Source: Pocillopora damicornis (taxonomy: Eukaryota). From it: 64,000 nt of DNA. How positions within the stretch are numbered: the first letter of the stretch is position 1; each line of letters begins with the position of its first letter. Positions 22,751-43,538 of this stretch are shown in pieces. Position numbers and translations under genes: made by a program. The notes beneath the pieces were generated by a model. The model was not told the DNA's origin, made no database searches, and worked only from the letters and a program-made list of their open reading frames with translations. The DNA is taken from positions 62,001-126,000 of the forward strand of contig NW_020844683.1 of the NCBI RefSeq assembly GCF_003704095.1, in the 5' to 3' direction.

Positions 22751-25700
22751 TCAGGCATCTGAGAGTGCGGTGTTCATCTCAGCGCCTCCATCTTTGTAAA
22801 CAAAGTTGGCCTAGAGGTAAGGATGAGGGGCACCTCAGGTTTAATTCAAAAGGTACCGCTGGAAAAGGAGCCACATGTTAATGACACAATACGAACACAC
22901 GAGACAAGGTAAGTCATCGCTTGAATTCTTAGAGCCGGCTAAAATCCACACCACGGTTTTACGCGATCAGTGGGCCTCAGGCTCTCTCTATAAGAGGATT
23001 GATTTAATGAAACTAATGTTCTTCCAATATGAGCTTTCGGCCTTCTTGACACCGTTCACAAAGATAAATGTTCAGATAAAAGGTTCAGCTGAACTGAGGA
23101 TTGTTAAGGACGCTATTTTGTTAAACTACGGCTACACTTTGTTTAAATGATCAAACGATGAAGTTCCTACTCTCAAAGATCGTTACTTACCCTCTCCTCC
23201 AGACCGGAGCTTCTCCGTTTTTTTTGAATTAACTAAAAGATGAAAGGAACAAAGTCAACAAAGATAGTAAATGTTGAAGGGAAAAATTGGAATCTACCTA
23301 ACCTTTAATGTCAACGGGTTTCACAAGGACAAAAAGATTTTGTTTTCCCTAACACAGTTCGCTTAAATTCAATTTCATACCAATATCAACTTCAAACTGA
23401 AGTTTGAGTTAATCCAGGAATTACCCCAACCCTTTACATCCTAACATCATCCATATTCTCCATACTGTTGTTCATACATTTACAAGGAAAATCTGATTAA
23501 CAATCGAGAGCTTTAGTTGTTGATCATTTCCTATCTTCTCGTGACCTTAATGTTTTATCCAGGCTTGACATTGTAAGGAGAAGTTAGATGCTAGTCACTC
23601 TTGGGGATCAAAGGGTTAAGACTATTCTGCACACAGAATTTTCTCACCATTACCGCCAACTCCGTTCCAGTCTCATCTCTTTCTTGACTTCGAAGGGGGA
23701 ACAGAGAGGACCGTGGAAGCGAAGTTGCATTCACATGCATGCAGCATGCTTGTTCGCCGACACAATTTCGAACAGTGAAGTAAGCATTGGGACTAGGGTT
23801 CTAATACCGCTTTATGTTTAAGCCAAGACCATGCACTCGATTCAAAAGGTTAGGGCACAGAATAAGCAATTTTCTTTTTGGTATCCGCCGCTTTCGCCCC
23901 CTATCGAGTTCGCCCCTACCTTATACCGTGTTGGCCCCCACACTTTTCGAGTTCGACCCCACCAAGTCGAGTTCGCCCCCAGATTGATTCATGTCTAAAT
24001 TAGTTGCTATCGAACATTGCAAACAAGTTAAAACCAAGACAAGTTTTGAATTTTAATTGACCGACGGCCATTTTGAAAGTTTATATGTGCGTGGGAGCTG
24101 GGGCGACCGGAAACAAAAAATAATGTGGTCAAACAGTGAAATACAGAGAACTTTCGTTGGTCATGACCTTTATAGATTGGGTGGCTCCTACAAGAGCCGT
24201 TTTTGTATTTGACCGAACCGAAAGGCTACAAGGTCGTTCGACGAAAACCATATGAAGCGTGGAACGCATTCTCTTGGTCAGTCTTAAATAATCAAAAGCC
24301 TGACCAAATCGTGGTGTCGTAAATTCTTCAGTCTTAATTTCATAAATAAAGCTAAACGAGGTAAGTATCTGTTACACATTTATTACACATTTATTACAAG
24401 TCTAACAACTTAAGCAATGCTGTCGCGATGAAAGTGTGGTTAGCATCTTTTCAAGTCTGGTTGTTATGATCAACACAATGCGATGAAAGCGTGATTTGCG
24501 ATCCTGGTTTGCATTTTCTCAAGTCTGGTTGCTATGACCTTAAAACACAATGAAGTGTGCAACGCATTCTCTCAAGAAGTCTTAAATAATCAAAAGCGTA
24601 ATCAAATCGTGGTTTCGTAAATTCTTTAGTCTTATTTTCATAAATAAAGCAAAACGAGGTACAAGTCTAACAACTTAAGCAATGCTGTCGCGATAAAAGC
24701 GTGGTTTGCATCTTCTTTAGTCTGGTTGTTACGATCAACACATTTCGTGTTCGTTAGATAAACCGAGGTTGTTTTACATCTTTTCCAGTCTGAATAATAA
24801 GTTAAGCAATGTTGTTTTCATTAAGTGTGGTTCTCTTTATCACAAGTTCAGTGTATACAATTATTTCTGGTAACCCCAGATTCCACGCAGAGTATTTAGT
24901 TGATTCCGTCAACTCAGTTCCCGAGCGGGTTCCGCGCAATTGCCGAAATTCAAAACGGTCGTCGCTGACGTGACATTTGGAACATTCTGCTAGTGCCTTC
25001 GTCACAAATCAACTCATCTGGATATCACTCAATCAAGGGGCGAACTCGACTTGATGGGGTCGAACTCGGAAAGTGTGGGGGCGAACACGGTATAAGGTAG
25101 GGGCGAACTCGATAGAGGGCGAACGCGGTGCAATTCTTCTTTTTGAGTCTATAAATTTATTCTTTGCAACCTAAGAAACTCTTCGGCATGCTGAGCTTTT
25201 CATGATGAACTTAAACATTGCCTTCACTCCTCCATGACACCAAGACTCGTCAGAACAAAAAGTAAATTTCACTTGGAATGAAAAGGTTTTTTCTTTAGTA
25301 TAATATACGCTCAGAAAGACAAGGCTACCCACCTTAAACGCTACAAGAGCCACAGCAACTACAGCCAAGGTGCAGAAGACAGATATGAATGCAACACTAG
25401 TAACAGACACACTGCTGCTTGCGGTTTCCTCTTGTTTTTTGGAAACAGTTTTTTCTTCCACATACATGGGCGACGCTAACATAACGTCGGGTTCAGCTAC
25501 AAAGGTGATACCGCTGAATTCAATGACCAGTTCGTGATTGCGAGCCTGTAAAAGGAAAAGAACGCTCTTCTACACAAAGTAACATAAACAGTTTTCACTC
25601 CAGAGATCTTTTGGCTAAATAACTCGTAGTTATAGTCAAAATAACATGAGCTGTTGTTCCAGAAATTTGTCCCGAAAATCCTTTGCTACATCCAAAACTC

Positions 25701-28700
25701 TTTGTGAACCACGTGGTGTTCCTGTGACCTACTAGGGTTGACTCTTGTTTTTGTCAGATCAGTAATGAGATTCATCAAACCTTTTCAGTTATTTCATCTG
25801 CAAAGTCTCTCAGGTCTTTTCCCCCGCTAGCTGGTTCAACGCTAAATCCAACTAAAATACTTCCCTCTTGCACCTAAAAATATAACGGAGAGGAACTCAG
25901 AACGAAGAGGTGAATCCATGTGCGACAGACAAACAGTGACGAAAACTACACAGCTATGAATTAATGTATTTTTACCTTAAACATAATTCTCTCCAGAGGA
26001 AATCTTACTTTAAATCATATTATTACAAAAGAAGTACCCTTGGGGTTTTTGTTTGATGTTTTGTCAGAGACCCTCCTCCCAGTCAACTTTGCACGCAACA
26101 CGCTCTCTTTTGCGTTACATGACGGGACGGATGCGGAGGAGACTACCTTCATCCAAGTATATATCAAGAGCGCACATACCTCAAGGCCATGTAGTTGATT
26201 TTCCTTTAATGAAAACATTGTTATCATCTGTGTCTTGACTGATCTAGAAAACGAGACATGAATATTTATTTTAACACAATCACCGGTACGATCTACTAAA
26301 CGGACCAGCTGACTGACTTATGACTACGAACGGACGGACGGCCAAATAGATGGAAGAAAAATAGAAAGAGGCTGAGACAGACAAACAAACGCAGCTACGA
26401 AAAGCTGACGGACCAGTCAAGTACAGATTCATTGCTTAAAAGTGATTTTAAAAAAATCGAACGAACAGTGCACTCACTCTTTAAATTGACCCAAAACATC
26501 CTTCACTAAACCTAGGCTGTAGTTGAAGGTAAGTCCAACATGGACGCTCCTAGAAAAAAAAGGAAAACTCAAAACAGAACCATCAAAACAAAATTCCAAA
26601 CTGAGGTTACAACAGTAAAAAAAAAAACAGCAATTTTATTTAGAACAGAACGATTACTTTAAGGCAGAAAGCATACTTACAAAAGTTGTGGACCTGTGAA
26701 GAAATAGGGAAAAAAGAAACCATGAACATTTCAAAGCCTTGTCAACCAGATTAACGTTTAACTGGAACGATGATGTTTTGTCTCGTGCGGGCTAAAAGAA
26801 ATAACTTAGACCTCCGGATCACGAAGAAAAATCTTTCTTTACAGTTGGAACTGTTACTTTTAGGGACTTTTAGAAAACCACGACGGCGACGGAAACAAGA
26901 AAATAGATCTAATGATCTAGAAAAATCTAAACCTATGTGCATTTCTAAGCCTTCCTCTGTAGAACACCAACTTCGCACGGGAACCTCTACATAAATTTAA
27001 TCGCGTTTTTATTTTGAACTCCACACCATATTCACATGTCTTGCCGAAAGAAGAAGTCGCACTGCCACAAAAAGTAAATATATCAAGCAACTGGCGAAAT
27101 TCTATGAAATTAAGTCTTTACATATCAAGAAATTCTCAGGAAAAGTAAAGAGATTTATCAGGGTTGGTAATATCTATACCTTTATTGGCGTCACAGTTGG
27201 GTTTTCCCCTTACTCTAGTTCCAGGCCACTCGGATCCGTCCCCTGACGCGCACCAACAATATCCAGTAGAGCCCCAGCACTGCACAAGCGCATAGCTACC
27301 ATCTGCATTGCACTGGGGTATGAAGGCTCCTACCAGCGCGGGGTGGGTGGCTTGATAAGCTTTCTGTTGGCATTCTGTGAGACCTGAAAGTAAAAAAAGA
27401 TTCCAAGGTACAACCCATAAGTTTTTCTACCCTTGAAATATCACTGCTAGCAAGCAACGTCTCCTAATGCTATAGTCATTTCATCATAAAGGCCACCGAA
27501 ATATTAGAGAACAAACACAAAATGGATTAAGAAGGATCAACCTCGCTGTTCCTAAAAAAAACTGTGTATACACTGAAACTGTGAGTTCAGATCTGATTTA
27601 CAGAATCTTTATGGTTTGAATATGAAGAGACCTCAAGCGAACCAAACATAGACACAATAAACCACAGTACAACCACTCTGTATTTCAAAGTACGGTGCCG
27701 CTTACATTGCACCTCCTTGCCCATTCTGTTGTAGAACTTGGGTTTGCAAGCATCAGGGCCACAGCCTCCCATCGGGGCTATACAGTTGGCGTCAGGATTG
27801 CTGGTACAAGAAGCATTCTTACAAGTATCACCGCAAAGCTGCCATGTTTTGCCGTCATCACAAGAAGGACCGATACTGAATGTGATGGCACCTACAAGGA
27901 ACAGTGACTTAATACTGTGCCTAATGGCAAGATGTTAAATTCGTTAGAGGCATCAGATTGCTGGAAACGCGGATATCAACACTAGTCACTCTCGATCTCG
28001 TTGTAATATATTAAAATATCAACAGCTAAATCACTCCTAATGTCTCGAATATGACTCATTTACTTATTACAATTGCAAAGGCAACTTCTTAAGTACACTC
28101 TCAATGAGGTTGCTTAGGAAATACGATTTACGTCACCTTTAAAAGGTAAGAGACATTTGTTACCTCAAAGATACCTTTTCTTTCTTTCAGTTTGAAACCT
28201 ACATGTAACATACGTGGCTACTTTGCCCCATTGTCAGATCGCCCCCATAATCAGAGCGTTCCATAAAGAGCGAGATCGCCCCGCCGCCGTCATTTCGCCA
28301 CAAACAAAAGTGAATTTGCTCCAAACACTTGGCGAACTAATTGAAATCCTAAAACGCATACGACATAATTCGAAAGAGAGTGAAAAGGAAAACGAACGAC
28401 CGAAAAGAACACCCCTGGAAGCACAGATAACTTTGCATTCTCCCAAACCTCAATTTCATGTCGTTAGCAATTAATATAGTTGAAATGAGGCCGGTGCGAT
28501 ACCGGTGCAGCGCTCTACCAACTGAGCTAACAAGCTAACTGGGATTGGCAGAGGTCATAGGTTCAAATCCCGTATGGGCCTGAATTTTTTTCATGCCTTA
28601 TTTCAACTACTAGATTAGTAGTGTTCATAACTGCCAGGATCGCTTCTATATCCGTTTCTTCAATCGCAGTGCACATACACGATTTTCATCTATTTTAAGT

Positions 28701-31700
28701 CATCAGCAATTAATATAATTCATAAAGAATTTATACAACTTAAGGACTAGGGTAGTGGCTGAGAGGTCGAATAACAAAACGTTTTGTTCACTACTGTTGG
28801 GAAATGCTTGTTCAATTGCAGAAACAGATTTGCTGTAAGGGAAATTACTAAATGGATTGATCACTCACACGTTGGTCGTCCCCTGATTCTGGTGTCAGGG
28901 ATCTCTTTTCCATCTTTATCAACACACCAGCAGAAGCCTATGGAGCCGTGACACTGTACTGGGGCATATGAACCGTCAGCATTGCACTTTGGAACAAACC
29001 CGCCAATGAGAGGGTTTTGAGTTGCATTCAAATTCTCCTTTTGACATTTCGTAGAGCCTGAAAATGGAAACAAAAATAAAACTTCTCTCACCCATGAGAA
29101 TTCTTGAAATTTCTATAATTTCAAACTTGAGGTCTCAACAGTTGATTGATTCAACTCTTCCCTCAAAAGCCCCGACTAACTTGCCTTCACCCTTTCTGTA
29201 AGCGGCTTGAGATAAAGTAACTTCAATGTTACGGGGAGGGGGGGAGTCAGGCGCGGTGGGGTGTGGTGCACTTGACAAAAGGGCATTTTGGTNNNNNNNN
29301 NNNNNNNNNNNNNNNNNNNNNNNNNNNNNNNNNNNNNNNNNNNNNNNNNNNNNNNNNNNNNNNNNNNNNNNNNNNNNNNNNNNNNNNNNNNNTGATGACA
29401 TTTTTCAATAAGCTTCCTCCGCATTTGTAAAATCTTGATTGCCAAGCTGCAGTTCACATTTCACATACTTAGAATCTTCAAGCACAATAATTCTAAACTA
29501 CCCAGCACAACACGTTTGGTTCATTTAGCATAAACAGAAGATGCGACAAAAAAGTTGACTTTTCTGTCATGAAGATCAATTATTAATTCGTCTCACAATT
29601 AATAAAGAATGTATTTAATATCATATCTAAGGATGTTTGAACTGATAGACTAACTGACAAATTACTAGACTGACAAATCACAAATATTTCCAGTAGGTAC
29701 CCGAGCACGAAGAAATAATCAATTCCACGATACGTACTCGCTAAACAGTCCACAATATTGTCGTTGTCATCAAAGAACTGTGCGTTGCAACCGCCACAGT
29801 TATCCGGAAGGCATTTGGCTTTGGGATTTGCAGGGCAGCTAGCTCTTTCACATGGGTTGTTATGACACATAATGAAAGGGGCACCACGGGGACAAGCTGC
29901 AAAAGATGGAAAGAAAAGAAAAGAAAAGAGCATCACACTCTACACCTCACCAAATTTTGGATGAAAAGTTACCTGCTGTGTAAAATTGAATTAACTGCCA
30001 ATTAAAATAAACTGTAGCGCACTATCTGCAATAAAAGGACTTAAATTAAACTAACCAAGATATAAAGCAACAAAATGTTCTTGTTAATTATATTAGTTCT
30101 CCTTTACTAAGGAAATATTCTCTGACAATTAAATGAGAAACTTTGCCCTAAGGAAGAGTACCTTCTCGGACAGGTGCACTACAGACACGCCCACATCCAT
30201 TACCGCAACACTTCTGTTCTCCTTGGCAGTCACGGTCTGAACTGCACTCACTTTTACAAATACCGACATGGTGGATATCAACTGCTGGGCAATACCCCGG
30301 TTTAGCTGCAGAAGAAAAGCAGTAATTTTATTTTTGTGCCATCCAGTCAACACACGATTGTCACAATTTAATGCAATCTTAAGGCATATGAATAAGTTTT
30401 AGTTACTTGTTAGTTACTTGCATGGATTCATTTTCCAATCAATTTCTTTCTCAGTCGCTCAAACAATTATTTCTTCACAATTAGAGGGATTCTTCCAGAA
30501 AGAGGCATTCTTTTTTCTCATCAGTTTTAACAACAATGTAATGACATTGAACTTGAATCATTATCTATTTTGACTTTTAACAGACTCCCCAAGCTTCTAA
30601 AAGATTTCCCTATGAGTCAGCCCAATAAGTTGCTTTCTCCACCATCATTTGTGCCATAACAAGGTTGAGCATCGTATCTATGCATAATTAGAGAAAAGCC
30701 AGTTTTCACCTAAAAGCCTTATTTAAAACGGTTCAGTAATTTCACCTGAACTATGACCTTCTTGCAATCAGCAACTAAATCCACACCATATTTTTGATGC
30801 ATCATCAGATGTGACAAAGCAGCAGCATACAAAGCATACATATTTCAGGAAGCTTGAGAGTCCAACTTCTAGAACATTAGCGCTTTTTATGAATTAATTG
30901 AAAATATTTCTGACCATACAAGGATAGATCAACAAGTACCTTTATATTCTGGAGCAGTACAGACATGACCACAGCCATTGGAGCAGCACTTTTGATTTCC
31001 TAGACAGTCATTGTCAGTGCTGCATTTCTCTGTGCATGTAGCAACTTGATCTGGCTCTACCGCTGGACAGAAACCAGGCTTGATGGGAACCTCTTTGCAT
31101 TTACAGATATCACAGCCATCTGGACCCTGAGCCCAACCAAATTCACAGTACATTCTGCACACTACAGGCGCACACACTGAAATAGTGGAAGTCTTTTATG
31201 AGCTTACAGAACATTGAATCAAGTTTTTTTCCTGAGCAAATTAAAAATTTAGTTGAAAATTGGTCAATTCTATATCTGAGAGGTGAGAGCTAAACAGTGT
31301 TTCATATCTTTTGTCTCACAATGTTAAAACTCAAAAAGTTGAGGTGTTGGATGATTTGTTTACCTTGAGCTAGCAGTTATAAATAATGAAAAGAACATAA
31401 AACAGTGATCAAATCGAAACTGACACATCACAACCAACTTACACCACTTGAATCTTATGGCTAATAACATCACAGCCAAATGACAAATCAGTTTATACAA
31501 ACTGGACTTAGTTCATTCAGCTGATAACATCTATTCACTTGACTCTGTTGAGGACTTACATTCTGAATGTCAAAATGTTAGTCACTACTTCCGTCGACAA
31601 TCCCTCTCAGGACTACACTTACCCAGATGATCAGACTGCACTGTTACATGTGATCATCAGAAATAAATTACCTTTACTGCAGGTTGGTCTTCCTCTCACT

Positions 31701-34700
31701 TTAGTTCCTTTGATTTCCCACCCCTGTGTGTTAACACACCAACAGTAACCAGTGGAAGGGTGGCATTGCACTTCTTCAAAGCTGCCATCAGCTTTGCACT
31801 GTGGTATATAACGACCAGGCATACGAGTCTCTCCTTTGTTCCAGAGATAAAAGATATAAATGTTATCAATACTACATTGTTTAAACACACACACCTGCTA
31901 TGCAACATTTCAGTGCCCACTATATACCATTTCAGCTATAATAAATACAAGAATTTTGGGGTCAAGATTGAGAATTGCATATCTCTGAAAAAATACCATC
32001 TAGCTGTTCTAATGTTAGCTACTAAATTTGTTCAGGTTCTTTTGCAATACATTCACTTGTAAAGGCAGAGCTACTTTGAAAACATCCTACAGAATGAGTC
32101 TCCTAACCTCCCATGCAACGTCTCTCAGTCTATTGAAAGTAAATTTTATCTACAATGAGAAAAATTTCAGGGTTTTCTAAAATAACATATTTGAATATTT
32201 GTGATATTTTTTAAATGGTTATTTCAATCATTATTTTTCATATGTTATTTTTCATTCCATTTGTTTTTTCTTTTTTTTCTCCTTTTTGGAGTACACATGT
32301 CACTTAGCATGTTCCATTTTGGGGAGAGATTGGGGTAGTATAGTCAAAAAGACAAACTTGGGAATGAGAGTGGAGATCACAAACAAATCTCTGCATATCA
32401 GATTTCCAGAGGTTGACATCTAGTAAGTAAGTAAATAAGTTAACTCCTTATTTAAAGAGGGTTTCACTTAAAGGCCAAAAGGTTTATAATTTGTGGCCCT
32501 CAAAACTTGTAGCCATCCCTGAAATGATGGTCAGTTCAATGAATACCTGTAATTTACACATTTTGTTTGGGATCCCAATTATTCATAATTACACTTACCA
32601 CTTTGTAGCGTCTGTAACTGGCACAATGTTAGACCTACCAACAAATTTTAAAAAGCATCATGTTAAAGGGCACTGATTACTGACACGTTTTCAGCAGTGG
32701 AATTATTATCCAATACCTGCAGTTAGTCTACCTAAACAAGTAACACTCAACGTACAGGGCTAAGTTATCTGAATTAGGTTCACTGACTACTCAAATATGG
32801 TTTCCTTTACAGTTATTGATGGTGGTTCAGATTGGGTTCTACCAAATCAGCCCAATTCATAAAACAGTCTTGAGAAAATAATCAAGGTTTTCATTGAGAA
32901 ATTTAGTACATGAAGCACTCTTCACAGAAATTTAATATTAGCCACATTATAACATTTTTTTTTTTTGTAACTTTTGATGCACATGGATAGCCCTGGATAG
33001 TTGATAATTCTATTTATGGTCTTCTAATCAACTAATCGTGAGTTCATGAATTACATGTGTTCTATTGGGATCCATCAATTTGATTGCACCTGTTTTGGCT
33101 GACAGGGATGAAGTCTCCCCTCAAATCACCATACCAGTCACTCCTGGAGATTATCTAACCTAAAACAACTGATCCTGAAAGACCATGACCCAAGATACCT
33201 GAAAAATTCTTAATGGAGTTTACGAGAACTTGACAATGATTCTAACATCCTGGCATTTTCAGACCATAAAAACCAGGTCATTCATGCTCTCAACACCAAC
33301 TAAATGTTAGATATGCAATTTTTCATAGCTTACTACTCTTCAGTTGACTGAGACATGTTGGTTTGTGGAAGTGTCTCCTTGTCCCATTCACTTCCTTTCC
33401 ATCAGCATCAACACACCAGAAGTAACCTTCATGGGACTGTACTGGCTCAAAACTTCCATCACTCTGGCACTTGGGAACAAACTCTCCAAGCATACCAGTT
33501 GATAATTTTTGCCGAGCTTGACACCGAGTTAAACCTAGACAATAAGATGAGCCAAAAACTGTTACTCCTAAGTAAATTTTACAAATATCTAAGTTGTCTG
33601 GACTTTGAGAAAGGTCAGCTTGGGTATTTCTGCCCAATATGTTCCAACTAAAGGTTAATAATTCCAAAAAAAAAAGGTGAGTTCAGACAAGTTTAAGATT
33701 GTTCTACTGTTAATGTATGTAACTCTCTTGGATGGAATACAGGTTAAACATGTGTGAAAGAATAAATAACATTTACCCTTGACACAAGATTGACTATTGG
33801 CACAGAACAAACCTTTAGTGCAGTTGACAATATTTCCTTGTTCATCATGAAATTCAACCTTGCACATCTTACATGGATCAGAGAAGCAAGTAGCTTTTGG
33901 ATAAGCAGGACATCTAGCAAACTGACACATGTGTAGACACAGCAAGAAAGGTTTTCCATTTGGACAAGCTGAAACAATGACAATGACAACAAGATTCTTT
34001 CTTTGTCCCACCCTTAAACAATCGCTTCTTATCTTTGTTAAATTAATTGATAGAGCTAAACAATTTCTCTCAGTGTAGCATAGGATGATGTCAATATTGG
34101 TGATACTAACAGCACATAGAAAACTTTCACATGTGACCCTGATATATGGCCTAAATGACCAACAAGTCTTCTGTGGCTCATAATCAGTGTAGAAGTTGAA
34201 AACAAGTGGGGAGCATGGTAGCCTGGCAATCAGCATGCAAGATTCACCAGTTCCAAGACCTGACCCCGCCACTGTGCTACATTCTTGGGGTAAGCACTTA
34301 GCTCTCACAGAGCCCCTCTCAACACTGGAGAGTAAGTGGGTAGTAGAAAACAGTCAGAGAAGTGTGACAAATTGTATGGGGTCATCTGCAATGGACTATG
34401 ATATCCCATCCAGGGAGGAGTGTCAATACCCAATATCCCATCCAGGGAGGAGTGTCAATACCCAGCTGGTCACTTCATGTTACAGAAAGCTGGGATGGAT
34501 CACTTGGCTCAAAGACAGACTTGCATGTAACCATGATTAGTTTGTGGAGCATCTGATCCTGAATCAAGTATGGTTAGGCTTTGAACCCTCACACTTAACT
34601 CAGATCATTATTTGCCCCACACTTGTGAGAAATAATGAACATCATTCTTTAACTATTTCCCATGAACAATACACTCAATACAATTCTTGAGTTTTTCTAC

Positions 34701-37700
34701 TTATACAAAGGCAAACCAACTGTCTCAAGCATGTTCTTTGAAAACTCCACTTTAGACATTTTACACAGATTTATGTACAAGAAAACATAATTATTGTCTC
34801 AAAGTGGCTCAGAACATTTATTTAGCCCCTCAGTAAAACTGATAACTCCTCTTTCTTCAAGCACCAACCTAATATTTCATAAGAGGTAACTGTTGTAACT
34901 GATGTTGTTGTTGTGGAAGCAGAGACCTATATCTCATTTTGGAGGGGCAGAAATGTCCCCCAGGGCAAAGTTTACTGAGAGGACATTACAAAATTGTAGG
35001 TTGAAAGAATGCTGATAAGAAAATAAGAAAAAAGAACCAATAATAATAATGAAAATAATTTATAAACTCATATAATGCATGCTACATGAGGCAATAATCC
35101 AGTGCACTTTATCAAAAATATGATAAAATTGGCAGATACAATATGATAACAAACAGTGAAATTGCTTAAAATTACAAGAATGAAATGCTGTGAAAAAAAT
35201 TTAAGACTAAAATCATGTGACAACTAAAATGGCTTTAACTAAAGCAGCTTAGGCAATTTACATACTTGTAAAAGAAGGTTCTTGGCAGGTTAATCCACAT
35301 CCTGAGACATTACAGCACTTTTGCATTTCTTGGCATTCATTATCTGAACTACATTTGTTTGAGCATGCCCCAGTTCTTGGCTGTTTCACAATTGGACAAA
35401 AGCCATCCTTGATAGATCGTTCTGTTGAGAAGAGAAACATATCAGTGTTACTGTAACATTCTCAATGTTTTGCACTGGGTTTGATTTCAATGACATTGAT
35501 AAACCTTGCTGAAGTTGTTTATATGGGTGTGACCCATTTTGACCAGGGACTGAAACAATAATGTTGCTAGCGCTATTATGGGTAACCAATCCACAAAAGA
35601 ACATAAATTAGTGAAGACTTCTTTCAAATACCCAAAGCAAATAACACAATACCCACTAAAAACAGACTGACATTTAAATTCAAAACTCTTGTTTCAAAAG
35701 GACATATGCCAGAAATAGTTGACAAATTGCTTAAACACACACAAACTTTTCTAACTCTTAAAACATGGAACCATACAATCATATGACCCACCCAACATTT
35801 TGATTGATTATGACTGACATGTCAATTCAGAGTCTTCACCCCTCCACACCCTAACATAAGTATGCATGTTCTTCATATTGTTCTCTCAACATTTCCTAAT
35901 TAAGTTGCTGCCGATGGGAATTTCTTTAACAATCAACAGCCTCTTTGGTTGGTGATCATTGCTTATTTTTCTGTGATCTGAAGGTGTAATTCAAGGATAT
36001 TGCAAGGAGAAATTAGATGTTGGTCATGCTTATGGGACAAAGGGTTAATTAAATATATTACCACCAAGTGAACATAACATCTGCTCCATCAGTCCAGTCA
36101 AAAGGTACCAGCAACAGGCAATTTTGTTGCAAATAACAAGATATCTGCTGCTTACTTTCTACTAAACTTCATTGACAACAAATATATAGTCCCTACTGTT
36201 TCAAACTGTGAGCAAGAAACAAAAAAGATGAACAGAAACCGTTTCTTCAAATGAATTGACAAAGGCCCCATCATTTAGCAAATGTGTACAAGCACCAAGT
36301 GGCAGAAATTAATGGGGCCAAGAAACAACTTGAACATACTGGCAACTGCATGAAAATTAGCCACTGAAGTGGTCAGCAGTCAATGTTCTTGCAGACATTG
36401 TTACTGCTGCCTTAAGCAATACAGGCCTTCAACCTTTGCTGCCTACTACTCAACTCATCTTGCCTACCACTAAAAAACCTTTGGACTGGGCTGCTCCATA
36501 CACCTGCATTAACATGTACATACTTGAACGTCCCTGGGAAGGACAGACTGGCATGCCTCTGACTCTTGTTCCTTGCAACTCAGTACCATTCTTGTCCACA
36601 CACCAGCAGTATCCAGTAGATGACCAACACTGAATCTTGGAGTAACTACCATCTGCTTCACACTTTGGTACAAACCTGCCAACAGGTTGTAGGCCACTGC
36701 CACTGAATGCTGAGGCCTTCTTTTCCTGCAGTTTACACTTTGAGAGACCTAAAAATATAACAAAACAATTATGGTGAGCACTTAATCATCCTGTAAGTAG
36801 CAGGAACTATAATTAGAAGCACTTAATTTATAACAAAGGGTTAAGAGTTTCTAAAGAAACTATTGTGCTACAAAGGTGGGGGTGGGAGGGGGGTTATACA
36901 AGATAATTAAGGTTAGTCGACTTAATTGAGTGTAAATTGGTGACCATAAAGAGTTTCTAAAGCTGATATTTTGAGTGTTAACCCTTCATCGGCTCAAAAT
37001 GTCAGCTTTAGAAACTCTTCATGAAGACCAAATTGAATCATCAACTCAGTTGATAAAACCTAATTATCCTATTTTAAAACAACCAATTTATGTAGCACTG
37101 GACATTCAGTTATATCATTCAGTTGTAAAGAGCTGAATCGTGGACAGAAAATTGCTGAATGGTTTTTATCTCAGTGCACATCCCAGAACAGGGTTCAATA
37201 GTTTACTCAAATAATTTTTGTCTTGGAACCATTTCTTGCACAAAAAAATACATAATACATAATTAGGGATACAATACATAATTCTCCAAACTGAAATCAC
37301 AAGAACTCTATGGCAGACAGTAAGGAGAATTACTAATGAGATCTTGGGAGTTAAAGGGTTCAAGCTTCATGTAAAATTTGGTAATACCTTCATGACAGTC
37401 AACCACTTTGCTGTTCTTATCAATAAACTCAACTTTGCATCCACCACAGGGGTTAATACGGCATTTTGCCTCAGGATGGGCAGGGCATGTAGACCACTGA
37501 CAGAAGTTGCGTAAGCAGGTGAACATGGGTTTCCCTGAGCAAACTAGAGAGGAAAACAGTGACATAGATTTTGTTTCACACTTGTGTAAGGCTCTCATCA
37601 GTAAATCATTTCAGTATCAAGAACAAACAGAGAGTAATTCCTCCTTTCATTATAATCAAATGTATACATTGCAAGAAAAAAATGGAATTGAAGAAGAGAA

Positions 37701-40700
37701 TCTTGATCAATCAACTGATAACAAGACAATTCTCTCTGCATACAGATAAAGCTATAAATTTAAACATGGACTTGGATATGACCTATTCATACAATACTAC
37801 TATAATGCCAAAAGTAAGATAAGGTTAAATCTGTGATTGATTTCTGATCATCTACTGTATCTCATTATATCTCAGTTGTCATTTCACCAGCCATGATATT
37901 TCACACTAGTAAGGCGAATTAATTATGTGAGTTCAACTGTTACAGCACCTCCCATAGCTGTCTTGTTACAATGTGGTAAGCCACGATTCATGGTTCCGAC
38001 CACAGGGTTTCCTCCAACATCAACACACCAACAGTAGCCAGTGGAGCCATAACACTGTACTTCCTCATAGCTTCCATCTGCCGCACACTGTGGTACAAAC
38101 CGTCCAATAATGGGGTGAGCTGGTTTTTCATCTAGAGAGTGAGTACCAAGGGCTTTCAGACGTTGATTCTGGCACTTGGAGAAACCTGGTGGAGAAATAA
38201 AACACAACAAAAAATGTACCAATTTATCCAAAAATAATGGTTAGTCTCTAGTAACACTGGCACTTGGAGAAACCTAGTGGAGAAATAAAACACAACGAAA
38301 AATGTACCAATTTATCCAAAAATAATGGTTAGTCTCTAGTTTTCAGAGGAATAAACAAAGTATGGAGAGTAAATGACTGCTAAATGCAAAAGCAAGAGCC
38401 AAGGGACTCTGAGTTGTGCAGAGTAAGTTAAATCCCTGCTGGCCTGATCATGGTGTTATATTCTTGGGCAGGACACTGTACTCCTACAAAGCCTCTCTCC
38501 ACCCAAGAATGGATGAATGGTAACCGTGAACCATCCATGGAATCTGACAAAATGCTGAAGATACACTACCATGGGCTAGCATCCTGTCCAGGGGGACAGG
38601 CTTAGAGCAGCTCTGATCTGTCGTGCCAAACCCCAATTTACCAATTTTCAAGCACAGTGATGATTTCAAAATAGGGAAAAGTAACAACTGTATAATTTCT
38701 TACAATTCTTTTGATAATTACTACTTCTAAAATAAGCTCCATTCCACCAAGTTGCATTAAACCACAGATCATCAATGGCCAAGCAACTGGGGAAAATTTT
38801 AGCCTGAACAACAAGATAATCCATTCATGAAGTTTATCTACACATTCTGTCTAACTCAATCTTCAACCCAGCTAAAGTAGTTTTTAAAAATTATTAGTAC
38901 GTGTTTCAAATGGGCAATACTTGAAGGACTCAAATCCATCACTTCCTTTAATAGCAATTACCATAACACTACAGTAGTGTGCTACACTTCATCTAATTGT
39001 ACAGTAGCATACCAAGTAACGAAACCTAGTTGCTCTCTAACAACTTCAATACTTACAGTCAACCTTTCTGCCATTTTTATCAAGGAACTCCACTTCACAT
39101 TTGCCACAGGTGTTCACCCTGCAGGTAGCATCTTTGTGGGCGGGGCATGAGGCTGTATTACACAGCATTGGATCACAGTCAAACCCTCTAACTGACACTG
39201 GGCACACTGAAAATGACATCGAATCTCTCTGTCAGCAATGACCATACAGTCATCTACATTATGGGTTAAACTCTCTACTATGTATGTTTGTACATGTGTA
39301 CCCAAATGACCACTCCCCAATGGGCCTTTTCATTCACTAACAAATGGTAGGATGGAGATGCCTCAAGAGCAGGTGTCTAAGCTAAACTTTACATTGAGAT
39401 GCCATTTGTTGACCTAACATGACGACAAGAAATTATTAACAGATACACAATTTCAATCATCAGAAAAAAAAAAGAGAATATCATGCACACTGCTGATGGC
39501 ATTGTATGTCTTTGGAGAAAGTGAAACATTAGCTGGCAATCAGTTAAGAAATTCATGCAACATTTTCTAGCTTAATAGTCTAACAATTCAACAATTCATG
39601 AAATGAGCAGGGGAGATCTTTCTTTCTCAATCATTCAACTTGTTTAACTCCCATGAGTAACCCAGACAGAATTTCTCCTTACAACATAAGTACAATATCA
39701 ACCAGATAAGTGATGAGAATAAAGAAAAATATAAATTTGGGGATAATTAGTTGATCCAATACTAAATTCTCTGAACTAACTTTATAAGATGTGTATGTTT
39801 GACAGTAAGGAGACTTACAAATTTGAGGTGGGAGTTAAAGGATTAAGAAAAGGTCATCTAAATATTGAATGAATGTTAACAAAACATGTGACATTCCTGA
39901 GAGTCTAAGAAGCCACTTTTTTCAATTCACATGATCACCACAGATACCTAAAAAAAACTGTTAATCTGATAATCAGTGAGACAAACAATAAATTACTACA
40001 AAAATATCACATTTGCAATTGATAACACAAGCAGAAAAGCAACTGGCATTGAAATGAATGCCAACATTAAAGAATGTTTGCTGGTTGAAAAAGAAATTCT
40101 TAAAATGAAAGCTTTCCCTATTAGTCTTGGGCCTTTCAAACTAAGCTGACGGCTTGCATTTTAGAGAGATTTTTAACCAGAAAATGCATTTCTCATGTTT
40201 GTGGCTAAAATTTGCAAATTTTTGCCAGTAGCGTCTAGATATACCAGAAGTTGTACAATCCAGGTCTCCTCTTGTTCGCGTTCCACTCCATTCATGTCCA
40301 TTCTGATCTACACACCAGCACTGTCCAGTTGATGAATGACACTGTTTCTCCTTAAATGAACCATCACTCTTACACTGTGGCACAAAACGACCCAATGGAG
40401 GAAGTTTTTCAGCTTCTTTCCTCTTCTTTTGGCACAGAGATAACTCTGAAATATAAAAGAAAAAACATTATTTAAGAAATTGTTTGCAGCAAACCTCAAA
40501 AATATTTGTTTCACACTGTTTGCAGCTACTCTATTTATTTATTTTGCTTTGTTTCTATAAACCATCTAAAAATATAAGAGGCTGTGAAGCACTGACTTTA
40601 ACAACAAAAAAGCTAGCAGCAGTAACTACATTAGAGTAAGTGGTTTGAACCTGATTGTGTAGTCTGATCACTCTTGTAAGAGTAGTCTTTATATGGAGGC

Positions 40701-43538: not shown

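What the first reader, a model, noticed from the sequence alone, without database searches (positions are those of the whole stretch)
22751..43538. Giant membrane-tethered multi-class protease-inhibitor-like mosaic
Seen: one ~1302-aa reading frame joins a signal peptide, 8 TY, 4 WAP, 1 antistasin-like and 6 X modules to a SEA-like domain, a TM helix and a short tail with an NxxY-type motif (ANFVY). Nearly all module exons are symmetric phase 1-1. Known: TY domains (thyropins such as sea-anemone equistatin) inhibit papain-like and cathepsin D proteases; WAP and antistasin domains inhibit serine proteases; these are usually small secreted proteins. Inference: a cell-surface broad-spectrum protease shield or scavenging receptor, built by exon shuffling. 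The ORF track shows only fragments of it.
Basis: partly seen in the sequence, partly recalled or inferred. Interest (0 to 1): 0.75.

Follow-up and report, generated by a model that had tools for sequence, protein, structure and literature searches.

The report
Coral membrane-tethered protease-inhibitor-like mosaic gene
This is one real, expressed coral gene for a long cell-surface protein built from some twenty small inhibitor-type modules, already predicted in related corals but never studied, and the assembly gap inside it hides further modules.

Summary
On the minus strand, 28 assembled exons (43538 to 22754, stop at 22753-22751) give a 1301-aa frame. All 27 introns are GT-AG and all 19 module exons are phase 1-1. 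Pfam confirms 8 TY, 4 WAP and 1 antistasin unit; the six X modules match no Pfam family.

RNA contigs from four studies show the predicted splices from AS-WAP3 to the first tail exon. The N gap lies in the intron between X5 and TY7. The transcripts do not join those two exons directly. The Pocillopora verrucosa protein (96-100% identical per exon, except the alternative last tail exon) has two extra TY modules there. So the gene is single, but the real protein probably has 10 TY modules and about 1430 aa.

The juxtamembrane domain fails Pfam SEA but matches this genome's own SEA domains profile-to-profile (89-91%), with the G|S motif in register. The NxxY motif is not conserved.

Orthologs with the same module order exist across Anthozoa, named "thyroglobulin-like" or "uncharacterized". 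Similar mosaics occur in hemichordates and arthropods. X is a widespread uncatalogued module (789 cluster representatives). Inhibitor function remains an inference. The scan's earlier notes concern this same window only.

The parts
43494..43538 (-). Exon 1: ATG and hydrophobic start of the signal peptide (45 nt, phase 0 out)
   Evidence: Donor CAG|GTTAGT. The N-terminus matches 5 anthozoan orthologs. No RNA was laid here.
43318..43336 (-). Exon 2: 19-nt micro-exon, end of the signal peptide (ATLLSA + 1 base)
   Evidence: Found from the ortholog N-termini. AG/GTAAGT flanks.
42648..42776 (-). WAP1 exon, phase 1-1
   Evidence: Pfam WAP 41.1 bits; 8 Cys; 100% identical to P0192.
41870..42037 (-). 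X1 exon (8-Cys module), phase 1-1
   Evidence: No Pfam family; member of the X profile.
40979..41170 (-). TY1 exon (4-Cys variant), phase 1-1
   Evidence: Pfam TY 38.4 bits; lacks the two central Cys.
40245..40445 (-). TY2 exon, phase 1-1
   Evidence: Pfam TY 71.9 bits.
39057..39206 (-). X2 exon; its 8th Cys codon is split over the junction to TY3
   Evidence: split codon reads C.
37949..38185 (-). TY3 exon, phase 1-1
   Evidence: Pfam TY 69.2 bits. Donor 37949 chosen by colinearity with the orthologs.
37388..37543 (-). X3 exon
36524..36748 (-). TY4 exon
   Evidence: Pfam TY 69.5 bits.
35266..35421 (-). WAP2 exon
   Evidence: Pfam WAP 42.1 bits.
33813..33968 (-). X4 exon; an in-frame alternative donor at 33777 would add 12 aa
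   Evidence: the orthologs run on from ...NCT(K/Q)G straight into TY5. No RNA was laid here.
33337..33534 (-). TY5 exon (4-Cys variant)
   Evidence: Pfam TY 53.3 bits.
32599..32634 (-). TY6a: 36-nt exon with the first Cys of TY6
   Evidence: 100% identical to P0192 residues 680-690.
31672..31833 (-). TY6b exon
   Evidence: Pfam TY 70.3 bits, profile positions 16-67 only.
30940..31176 (-). Antistasin unit + WAP3 in one exon
   Evidence: Pfam Antistasin 30.3 bits and WAP 53.7 bits. RNA joint 30305>30940 in 4 of 4 runs.
30162..30305 (-). WAP4 exon
   Evidence: Pfam WAP 52.5 bits. RNA record 10 joins it to both neighbouring exons (table 8).
29738..29896 (-). X5 exon, last exon before the gap
   Evidence: RNA record 10. 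A 28-letter loose end follows it in 3 of 4 runs.
29293..29392 (.). Assembly gap inside the intron X5->TY7; probably hides two TY exons of about 192 nt each
   Evidence: RNA loose ends and record 23. P0192 residues 929-1053 (two TY modules) have no counterpart in the window above 75% identity. The gap was not filled.
28869..29057 (-). TY7 exon; its last Cys codon is split over the junction to X6
   Evidence: Pfam TY 70.1 bits. RNA joint 27888>28866 in 4 of 4 runs..
27706..27891 (-). X6 exon (longer loop between Cys 6 and Cys 7); its 8th Cys codon is split over the junction to TY8
27180..27383 (-). TY8 exon
   Evidence: Pfam TY 62.4 bits. RNA joint 27381>27704 in 4 of 4 runs.
26681..26693 (-). 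13-nt micro-exon linking TY8 to the SEA-type domain (phase 1->2)
   Evidence: The same 11 letters lie between the sides of joint 26549>27178 in 4 of 4 runs (table 5c). They are found in the window with AG/GT flanks.
25781..26549 (-). SEA-type domain in three exons (26549-26478, 26243-26180, 25873-25781); the GSILV motif is in the third, and the domain runs on into the TM exon
   Evidence: RNA joints in 4 of 4 runs. hhalign against this genome's SEA domains gives 89.4% and 91.5%. Pfam SEA is not met.
25333..25545 (-). Exon with the end of the SEA-type domain, a stalk and the TM helix
   Evidence: RNA joint 25544>25780 in 4 of 4 runs; hydropathy 2.78 over 19 aa.
23191..23232 (-). Tail exon 1: basic stop-transfer stretch (LIQKKRRSSGLEER)
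   Evidence: The 43-letter loose end at 25333 in 3 of 4 runs equals this exon over the 30 letters shown.
22751..22810 (-). Tail exon 2 with the conserved C-terminal motif (ANFVYKDGGAE...) and the stop
   Evidence: Matches the C-terminus of 6 orthologs. No RNA was laid here.
22844..22858 (-). Alternative 3' acceptor giving a short tail (RYLLN, stop)
   Evidence: It equals the C-terminus of P0192, isoform X2 of P. verrucosa.

Best explanation
The locus is one expressed gene of a Pocillopora coral. It encodes a type-I membrane glycoprotein of about 1430 aa, of which 1301 aa are assembled.

Architecture (shown). A signal peptide is followed by WAP-X-TY-TY-X-TY-X-TY-WAP-X-TY-TY-(antistasin)WAP-WAP-X-TY(x3 in the transcript, x1 in the assembly)-X-TY. 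Then come a SEA-type juxtamembrane domain with a G|SILV motif, one TM helix and a 34-aa tail.

Mechanism (inferred). The protein sits on an epithelial cell surface as a multivalent protease-binding array. Its p41/saxiphilin-type TY modules would block papain-like cathepsins. Its WAP and antistasin units would act on serine proteases. The SEA-type domain would make the ectodomain a non-covalently held, sheddable chain. Alternative splicing of the last exon adds or removes a conserved cytoplasmic motif.

Shown here: gene structure, splicing of the 3' half, the modules, conservation across phyla, and SEA-type homology. Inferred: inhibition, SEA cleavage, shedding and location. My odds: one gene 0.95; membrane-tethered 0.85; at least one module inhibits a protease 0.5.
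For: - Pfam hits for 8 TY, 4 WAP and 1 antistasin unit.
- 27 GT-AG introns, no in-frame stop, and three conserved Cys codons split across predicted junctions.
- Seven spliced joints seen in 4 of 4 RNA runs from 4 studies; contigs join AS-WAP3/WAP4/X5 and TY7/X6/TY8.
- The P. verrucosa protein P0192 is colinear and 96-100% identical per exon in 22 of 23 exons compared; the 23rd, tail exon 2, is absent from that isoform.
- The same module order is found in all 7 full-length anthozoan orthologs, down to Nematostella at 52% identity to the Montipora query.
- The TY profile hits saxiphilin (1e-39) and the cathepsin-L-bound p41 fragment 1icf (1.3e-19) far better than IGFBPs (6e-10 and weaker) or EpCAM (6e-5).
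- The WAP profile hits anosmin, nawaprin, omwaprin and elafin.
- The juxtamembrane profile against 7 SEA domains of the same genome gives hhalign 89.4% (E 2e-6). With 11 homologs it gives 91.5%, with the GS motif in register. Controls give 0.3-1.1%.
- The three best named ESM-feature clusters are SEA (scores 0.81-0.83, a lead only).
- TM hydropathy and the basic stop-transfer stretch.
- Homologs in a hemichordate, arachnids and crustaceans add further inhibitor families (Kunitz, Lustrin_cystein) to a TY/WAP/antistasin/X array. A C-terminal TM stretch was flagged in 4 of the 5 examined (not the shrimp P0143), and a GS[IV]xV motif only in the hemichordate.
Against: - No activity data exist. TY and WAP domains also occur in non-inhibitory proteins such as IGFBPs, nidogen, EpCAM and anosmin.
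- The antistasin hit is a single 26-residue unit.
- Pfam SEA is not met for 6 of 6 homolog segments at E<=10, nor at this locus in the genome scan. The PDB profile search gave only chance-level SUMO hits.
- One coral ortholog (P0191) reads GDSILV instead of GSILV.
They rest on orthologs.
- No single contig spans the gap.
Confidence: 0.55

Rival explanations
1. The same gene and architecture, but the modules do not inhibit proteases. The protein is then an adhesion, matrix-binding or signalling receptor. Its membrane-proximal X-TY-SEA-TM cassette would work like the EpCAM/TROP2 TY + SEA-like pair, as a contact- or force-gated proteolytic switch that releases the conserved tail.
For: - EpCAM and Trop2 carry a cysteine-rich TY domain next to a juxtamembrane SEA-like domain, and such tandems behaved as proteolytic switches (PMC6586460, passages read).
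- The tail motif is conserved in all 6 anthozoan orthologs with the long tail, and it is alternatively spliced in two genera.
- The WAP profile's best solved match is anosmin, an adhesion protein.
Against: - A profile of the TY8-SEA cassette reaches Trop2 and EpCAM only at E 0.18-2.2, and only over part of the TY domain.
- The TY modules lie much closer to p41 and saxiphilin than to EpCAM.
- Every family that accompanies X in the homologs is an inhibitor family: WAP, Kunitz, Kazal, pacifastin, TIL, antistasin.
Confidence: 0.28
2. The protein is mainly a shed extracellular-matrix, mucus or skeletal-matrix component. The membrane form would be only a transient precursor, as proposed for agrin-like proteins in coral skeletons.
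For: - Red-coral skeletal matrix holds 'agrin-like' proteins drawn with FOLN, TY, WAP and TM parts (PMC7853314, section 9 read).
- SEA domains allow release of ectodomains (PMC10556640, abstract in the search listing).
- A Clytia protein that UniRef names 'Agrin' holds X and TY modules.
Against: - No proteome evidence for this protein was found in 6 literature searches.
- The conserved, alternatively spliced cytoplasmic tail argues for a function of the membrane form.
Confidence: 0.12
3. Two or more separate genes, or an assembly chimera, joined only on paper at the N gap.
For: No single RNA contig bridges the gap, and the contigs end 28-29 letters beyond the flanking exons.
Against: - Those loose ends continue in frame as TY-type coding sequence, not as UTR, when read by eye.
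- The sister-species protein runs through the region as one chain.
- 7 of 7 full-length anthozoan orthologs have the same order on both sides.
- Exon depths are alike on both sides within each run.
Confidence: 0.03

Closest known systems
RefSeq predicted orthologs: 'thyroglobulin-like' of Pocillopora verrucosa (P0192, 1416 aa) and Montipora capricornis (XP_068730483.1 and its isoform X1); 'uncharacterized protein' LOC111327458 of Stylophora pistillata and LOC5510701 of Nematostella vectensis
   Same: The same gene. The module order WAP-X-TY-TY-X-TY-X-TY-WAP-X-TY-TY-WAP-WAP-X-TY(n)-X-TY, the SEA-type domain, the TM helix and the tail are shared. P0192 is 96-100% identical per exon in 22 of 23 exons compared.
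   Different: The number of TY modules between X5 and X6 differs: 1 in Montipora, Oculina, Nematostella and the unnamed Logan protein P0191; 2 in Stylophora and Porites; 3 in P. verrucosa. The window shows 1 because of its gap. These are automatic names. I found no study of the protein.
Thyropins (MEROPS I31): MHC class II p41 fragment, saxiphilin TY domains, sea-anemone equistatin
   Same: The TY profile matches saxiphilin (1e-39) and p41 (1icf, 1.3e-19) over the whole domain. Six of the 8 TY modules keep all six Cys.
   Different: Thyropins are small secreted proteins or inserts (recalled). Here 8-10 TY modules are strung with other families on a membrane anchor. Inhibition is untested. TY1 and TY5 lack two Cys. 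Equistatin was not compared by sequence here; that an automatic annotation gave its name to a Stylophora paralog says nothing about function.
Membrane-anchored Kunitz inhibitors HAI-1/HAI-2 (SPINT1/2)
   Same: It works like them in principle: a type-I membrane protein carries inhibitor modules at the cell surface to control pericellular proteases. HAI-1 and HAI-2 are described as inhibitors of the membrane-anchored protease matriptase in the abstract of PMC3431340, seen in the search listing.
   Different: No Kunitz domain is present in the coral protein, though the arthropod homologs have them. The families differ, the modules are far more numerous, and a SEA-type stalk is present. This is an analogy, not membership.
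EpCAM / TROP2
   Same: The membrane-proximal plan is alike: Cys-rich module, TY, SEA-like domain, TM helix, short tail (PMC6586460 passages). The domain order of EpCAM is partly recalled.
   Different: Sequence support is weak. Trop2 and EpCAM are hit at E 0.18-2.2 and over the TY part only. The coral SEA-type domain keeps a G|S autoproteolysis-type motif.
Agrin and cnidarian 'agrin-like' proteins
   Same: A long array of inhibitor-type modules combined with a SEA domain. Red-coral agrin-like proteins are drawn with FOLN, TY, WAP and TM parts (PMC7853314, section 9).
   Different: No Kazal/FOLN, laminin-G or EGF modules here. X stands where FOLN/Kazal would be.
Arthropod TY proteins with WAP and antistasin domains
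   Same: PMC3407033 (passages read) reports thyropin-domain proteins associated with 'WAP-ATN' that are shared by insects, crustaceans and mites. Tick, scorpion and shrimp homologs found here carry TY, WAP, antistasin and X; an isopod homolog carries TY, WAP and X. A C-terminal TM stretch was flagged in the tick, scorpion and isopod proteins.
   Different: The arthropod proteins add Kunitz and Lustrin_cystein modules. In the passages I read, the paper mentions neither a membrane anchor nor X. Its Additional file 3, which lists architectures, could not be opened.

Membership tests
Thyroglobulin type-1 domain / thyropin (Pfam PF00086, MEROPS I31) | Match to PF00086 above the gathering score | tested here: met
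   8 of 8 modules score 38.4-71.9 bits against a cut-off of 20.6.
Thyroglobulin type-1 domain / thyropin (Pfam PF00086, MEROPS I31) | Six conserved Cys with the QC...CWCV core | tested here: met
   6 of 8 modules keep all six. TY1 and TY5 have four; these are the 4-Cys variants, a label I recall as 'type 1B'.
Thyroglobulin type-1 domain / thyropin (Pfam PF00086, MEROPS I31) | Tight inhibition of papain-like cysteine or aspartic proteases | not testable with these tools
   Only nearness to p41 and saxiphilin is shown.
WAP four-disulfide core (PF00095, MEROPS I17) | PF00095 above the cut-off and eight Cys | tested here: met
   4 of 4 modules score 41.1-53.7 bits against 20.8. Three WAP exons have 8 Cys; the AS-WAP3 exon has 14, i.e. 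6 + 8.
WAP four-disulfide core (PF00095, MEROPS I17) | Serine-protease inhibition or antimicrobial activity | not testable with these tools
   The closest solved chains are anosmin, nawaprin, omwaprin and elafin.
Antistasin (PF02822, MEROPS I15) | PF02822 above the cut-off | tested here: met
   30.3 bits against 21.2, covering profile positions 1-26 of 26. The unit is also found in Montipora, Nematostella and Glandiceps homologs.
Antistasin (PF02822, MEROPS I15) | Tandem antistasin repeats forming a full inhibitor domain (recalled from the leech protein) | tested here: not met
   A single 26-residue, 6-Cys unit is fused to WAP3.
SEA domain (PF01390) | Match to PF01390 | tested here: not met
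   No hit at E<=10 for 6 of 6 homolog segments. None of the 39 genome matches lies at this locus.
SEA domain (PF01390) | Profile-level homology to bona fide SEA domains, with the G|S[IV]xV site in register | tested here: met
   hhalign gives 89.4% (E 2e-6) and 91.5% (E 8e-7) against 7 SEA domains of the same genome. Controls give 0.3% and 1.1%. GS[IV]xV is present in 11 of 12 homologs, and GDSILV in one.
SEA domain (PF01390) | Ferredoxin-like alpha/beta fold and autoproteolysis | not testable with these tools
ESM-feature neighbours are SEA clusters at 0.81-0.83, a lead only.
EpCAM/TROP2 family | Sequence homology over TY plus the C-domain | tested here: not met
   E 0.18-2.2, with only about 32 residues of the TY part aligned.
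Type-I single-pass membrane protein | N-terminal signal peptide, one C-terminal TM helix, basic residues after it | tested here: met
   Hydropathy is 2.88 (10 aa) and 2.78 (19 aa), followed by K-LIQKKRR. SignalP and TMHMM were not available.
X module (uncatalogued 8-Cys domain) | C-x7-8-C-x3-4-C-x4-C-x7-9-C-x4-6-C-x2-4-C-x13-15-C with a conserved F and V, recurring in other proteins | tested here: met
   6 of 6 copies. The library holds 789 representatives at E<=1e-3 and 197 at E<=1e-10. No Pfam family was found for X-only proteins. No PDB relative was found.

The most novel reading that the evidence does not exclude
This is the cnidarian member of an ancient, pre-bilaterian family of sheddable, membrane-tethered poly-inhibitors. 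In this reading the uncatalogued 8-Cys X module is itself a new protease-inhibitor fold. X also alternates with Kazal domains in volvocine green algae. The membrane-proximal X-TY-SEA-TM cassette would be the ancestral form of the EpCAM/TROP2 type of proteolytic switch.
Probability: 0.12. Interest if true: 0.8.

Novelty: new variant of a known kind. Interest (0 to 1): 0.5.

Why it matters
If the modules do inhibit, this is a cell-surface, possibly sheddable array aimed at several protease classes at once. It is conserved from sea anemones to corals, with look-alikes in hemichordates and arthropods. That makes it a candidate for how epithelia without adaptive immunity buffer their own and microbial proteases at the mucus or symbiont interface.

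It also gives three concrete leads:
- A widespread disulfide module (X) that no domain library searched here names.
- A natural series of 1, 2 or 3 tandem TY exons at one position in different corals.
- A TY + SEA + TM cassette to compare with EpCAM/TROP2.

For annotation, it shows that the assembly gap removes coding exons from this gene.

Tried and rejected
The folds of X and of the SEA-type domain are untested.

Sequence searches that gave nothing useful:
- The X profile against PDB gave one hit at E 4.6.
- The ESM atlas gave no usable hit for X.
- The SEA-type profile against PDB gave only SUMO at E about 0.01, which I take as chance.
- Pfam SEA was negative.
- The TY8-SEA cassette reached EpCAM/Trop2 only weakly, so I rejected EpCAM membership.
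- X against WAP by hhalign gave 0.6%.

Gene-model choices that I dropped:
- Exon-1 donor at 43490 (phase 1). It was replaced by 43494 plus the 19-nt exon, after reading the ortholog N-termini.
- TY3 donor at 37970, replaced by 37949.
- X4 donor at 33777. I kept it only as an alternative to 33813.
- A single-exon TY6. It is in fact split.

NxxY as an endocytic signal: rejected. N is found in 1 of 6 orthologs with the long tail, and Porites has F for the Y.

A tRNA origin for the repeat at 28495-28544: ARAGORN found no tRNA.

Literature. Six searches found no paper on this protein or on this architecture with a membrane anchor. Additional file 3 of PMC3407033 (arthropod TY architectures) and Supplementary file 7 of PMC12549020 (Nematostella 'thyroglobulin repeat proteins') may bear on this. 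Novinec et al. 2006 was seen only in reference lists.

The spliced model was searched exon by exon. Whole-protein questions were put to the database proteins P0151 and P0192 instead.


Full report
WHAT IS THERE

The window is AT-rich eukaryotic DNA (GC 0.34-0.41). It has two runs of 100 N, at 29293-29392 and 46468-46567. All coding pieces of the finding lie on the minus strand.

It finds WAP in 4 of 4 pieces (41.1-53.7 bits, cut-off 20.8). Antistasin scores 30.3 bits (cut-off 21.2) directly upstream of WAP3 in the same exon. None of the six X pieces reaches any family's cut-off. The best were DUF4926 at E 0.25 and Toxin_21 at E 0.043.

The six X modules align with seven invariant Cys plus an invariant F and V. 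The eighth Cys lies inside the exon in four copies. In X2 and X6 it is a codon split by the intron and completed by the next exon.

GENE MODEL

Canonical splice sites in the right phase flank every module. I refined the model in three ways.

With the Montipora capricornis protein P0151:
- the TY3 donor is at 37949;
- TY6 is split into a 36-nt exon (32634-32599) and a 162-nt exon;
- the last exon is 22810-22754.

With RNA:
- a 13-nt micro-exon lies at 26693-26681 with AG/GT flanks;
- the borders of the three SEA-type exons and of the TM exon were fixed.

With the N-termini of five anthozoan orthologs:
- exon 1 ends at 43494;
- a 19-nt exon (43336-43318) completes the signal peptide.

The final model has 28 exons and 3903 nt, giving 1301 aa and a TGA at 22753-22751. 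It has 27 GT-AG introns and no stop inside any exon. All 19 module exons are phase 1->1. The micro-exon, SEA, TM and tail exons use other phases.

An in-frame alternative donor at 33777 would add 12 aa to X4. The orthologs argue for 33813. I did not build or search a joined protein of the window. Every search of window sequence was done exon by exon.

THE GAP, TESTED FIRST AS ASKED

The gap lies in the intron between the X5 exon (29896-29738) and the TY7 exon (29057-28869). Both borders are phase 1, so the frame is kept whatever the gap holds.

The run search returned 23 rows from 8 studies. Twelve rows are on record as RNA, and these are coral or marine metatranscriptomes and transcriptomes. 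I laid Logan contigs of four RNA runs from four studies on 25150-31149.

Seven spliced joints appear in 4 of 4 runs: 25544>25780, 25871>26178, 26243>26478, 26549>27178 (with the same 11 letters between in all four), 27381>27704, 27888>28866 and 30305>30940. Allowing for the stated cut offsets, these are the predicted borders. One contig joins AS-WAP3, WAP4 and X5 (record 10). Another joins TY7, X6 and TY8 (record 9).

No contig joins X5 to TY7 directly:
- In 4 of 4 runs the contig that ends with TY7 carries 29 further letters.
- In 3 of 4 runs the contig that ends with X5 carries 28 further letters.
- Neither set of letters is the other exon.
- Read by eye in the frame of the flanking exons, the letters after X5 begin like a TY module. 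Those before TY7 end like one, again with the last Cys codon split by the intron.
- In the fourth run a contig (record 23) continues from X5 for about 192 letters. The last 113 of them are only 86% like TY7 (16 of 113 differ). Other exons in that run differ by 1-3 letters in about 200.

The transcript therefore holds TY-type exon(s) that the assembled stretch lacks.

The protein 'thyroglobulin-like isoform X2' of Pocillopora verrucosa (P0192, 1416 aa) maps to every exon of the window at 93-100% identity. The exceptions are its residues 929-1053 and its last five residues, which belong to the short-tail isoform described below. Residues 929-1053 are two TY modules whose best match in the window is the TY7 exon, at 73-75%. 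P0192 has three TY modules between X5 and X6. Stylophora and Porites have two. Montipora, Oculina, Nematostella and an unnamed Logan protein (P0191) have one.

I conclude that the gap hides most probably two TY exons, a tandem triplication that the assembly collapsed or lost. The continuity is supported by frame, by the coding nature of the loose ends and by the sister species, not by one contig across it.

RNA SUPPORT AND ITS LIMITS

RNA evidence covers 13 of the 28 assembled exons (AS-WAP3 to tail exon 1). The 43-letter loose end at 25333, seen in 3 of 4 runs, equals the window's exon at 23232 over the 30 letters shown.

Exon bins lie at depths of about 240-1300 in the polyA and cDNA runs, against about 0-67 in intron bins. 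The tool warns that contig depth cannot rank expression.

The other 15 exons rest on splice sites and on orthologs. These are the two signal exons, the 12 exons from WAP1 to TY6b, and tail exon 2.

THE JUXTAMEMBRANE DOMAIN

Between TY8 and the TM helix lie about 110 residues with a GSILV motif. Tests against it:
- Pfam SEA does not match six homolog segments even at E<=10. Receptor_IA-2 is sub-threshold in 2 of 6.
- None of the 39 SEA matches in the coral's genome lies at this locus.
- A PDB profile search gave only SUMO at E about 0.01.

Tests for it:
- The three best named ESM-feature clusters are SEA, at 0.81-0.83, which the tool rates as a lead only.
- I took seven SEA domains of the same genome that pass Pfam's cut-off and compared profiles. 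hhalign gives 89.4% (E 2e-6) over 60 columns, with the GS motif in register.
- With 11 homologs it gives 91.5% (E 8e-7) over 70 columns.
- Controls: against TY 0.3%, and reversed query 1.1%.

I accept 'SEA-type' at the level of profile homology. Fold and cleavage are untested. GS[IV]xV is kept in 11 of 12 homologs examined; one coral has GDSILV.

TAIL

After the TM stretch (hydropathy 2.78 over 19 aa) come K-LIQKKRRSSGLEER and then ANFVYKDGGAEMNTALSDA.

All six anthozoan orthologs with the long tail keep the pattern A-x-[FI]-[VIL]-[YF]-[KRQ]-[DA]-[GE]-x-A-E. Position 2 is N in Stylophora only, and S or G in the other five. Porites has F for Y. An NPxY-like endocytic signal is therefore not supported.

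An upstream acceptor at 22858 gives the short tail RYLLN-stop. This equals isoform X2 of P. verrucosa, and Montipora has a similar pair of isoforms. The conserved motif is thus optional, which points to a regulated cytoplasmic partner.

RELATIVES

A profile of the six X modules was run against 1.84 billion cluster representatives. It finds 789 proteins at E<=1e-3, 197 at E<=1e-10 and 26 at E<=1e-30. Sources name 25 of the 28 representatives I looked up:
- rotifer, nematomorph and tunicate;
- echinoderms (sea stars, sea cucumbers, a brittle star, a crinoid);
- amphioxus and hemichordates;
- a hydrozoan protein named 'Agrin';
- arachnids and crustaceans;
- two volvocine green algae.

X-only proteins get no credible Pfam family. 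Their automatic names ('kielin/chordin-like', 'uncharacterized') show that no library names X.

X keeps company with inhibitor families: WAP, TY, pacifastin, TIL, Kunitz, Lustrin_cystein and antistasin. In Volvox and Edaphochlamys it alternates with Kazal domains.

Closest in plan is the hemichordate Glandiceps protein P0022. It has a WAP, antistasin, TY and X array, then GSIIV and a TM helix. Tick, scorpion, shrimp and isopod proteins add Kunitz modules, and three of them add Lustrin_cystein. A C-terminal TM stretch was flagged in the tick, scorpion and isopod proteins, not in the shrimp protein.

Within this coral genome X is rare. There are 9 matches, 6 of them in this gene.

X modules are as conserved as TY and WAP modules. 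Against Nematostella, X is 44-67% identical, TY 51-68% and WAP 53-81%.

WHAT IT MOST LIKELY DOES

Established knowledge that I recall, not tested here: TY domains of p41, saxiphilin and equistatin inhibit papain-like proteases, and one equistatin domain inhibits cathepsin D. WAP domains of SLPI and elafin inhibit elastase-type proteases. Antistasin inhibits factor Xa.

The TY profile of this gene matches saxiphilin (1e-39) and the p41 fragment solved with cathepsin L (1icf, 1.3e-19) over its full length. That is far better than IGFBPs (6e-10 and weaker) or EpCAM and Trop2 (6e-5 and weaker). The WAP profile matches anosmin, two snake waprins and elafin.

Together with the membrane anchor, this makes a tethered multivalent protease-binding array the best reading. 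SEA-type domains on membrane proteins often self-cleave and hold the two chains non-covalently (PMC10556640, abstract in the listing). A SEA or SEA-like domain next to a structured neighbour, as TY is in EpCAM and Trop2, behaved as a contact-gated proteolytic switch (PMC6586460, passages). Regulated shedding is therefore a reasonable second step. All of this is inference.

COMPARISON WITH WHAT IS KNOWN, AND NOVELTY

The protein is already predicted in RefSeq for sister species under automatic names. The sequence itself is therefore not new, and the window's copy is incomplete.

A 2012 survey noted arthropod thyropin-domain proteins combined with WAP and antistasin (PMC3407033, passages). A red-coral skeleton study drew 'agrin-like' proteins with FOLN, TY, WAP and TM parts (PMC7853314, section 9).

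In six searches I found no description of this gene, of the conserved WAP/TY/X + SEA + TM plan, or of X as a domain. I file it as a new variant of a known kind, the membrane-anchored multi-module protease inhibitor, with function unproven.

The EpCAM/TROP2 likeness is architectural only.

VERDICT

- Observation: confirmed, with the module count corrected upward by the gap.
- Interpretation: partly supported.
- Interest: moderate (0.5). It is a solid, conserved, unstudied family with an unnamed domain, but it is an already predicted gene and its function is only inferred.

Noticed in passing
window 28495-28544 (intron between X6 and TY7): A 50-nt element is very abundant in this genome. There were 860 first-look candidates; 40 were scored, and the matches listed are mostly 98% identical. 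RNA contigs pile up and break there in all four runs, with bin depth 480-720 against about 20 beside it. ARAGORN finds no tRNA. It is probably the core or end of a transcribed short mobile element.
   Followed up: partly
window 23888-24006 and 25010-25128; 24244-24747: An inverted repeat (119-nt arms, 89% complementary, 1003 nt apart) encloses two pairs of direct repeats (120 nt at 86%, 88 nt at 90%). It lies in the 2.1-kb intron between the TM exon and the first tail exon, and looks like a foldback or MITE-like insertion.
   Followed up: partly
proteins P0016 (Edaphochlamys debaryana) and P0025 (Volvox carteri), found with the X profile: The metazoan 8-Cys X module also occurs in volvocine green algae. 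There it alternates with Kazal domains and has a longer loop between Cys 6 and Cys 7, as in the coral's X6. Whether this reflects ancient origin or transfer was not examined.
   Followed up: partly
orthologs P0151, P0190-P0195; window intron 29058-29737: The number of tandem TY exons between X5 and X6 differs between coral lineages. It is 1 in Montipora, Oculina, Nematostella and P0191, 2 in Stylophora and Porites, and 3 in Pocillopora verrucosa. This natural exon-duplication series sits exactly at the assembly gap.
   Followed up: yes
G000:C2873:210830-213744 and G000:C3313:150493-150618: These are the only other X-module matches in this genome: two on one contig and one on another, at E 8e-9 to 8e-5. 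They were not examined.
   Followed up: no
window 46468-46567: A second 100-N assembly gap lies about 3 kb upstream of the gene's start. It was not examined.
   Followed up: no
window 26773, 26929-26963 (intron TY8 to SEA exon 1): Low-depth unspliced RNA contigs show a 16-nt insertion in 3 of 4 runs and a 33-nt deletion in 1 of 4 runs relative to the window. These are probably intron polymorphisms between colonies or species.
   Followed up: no
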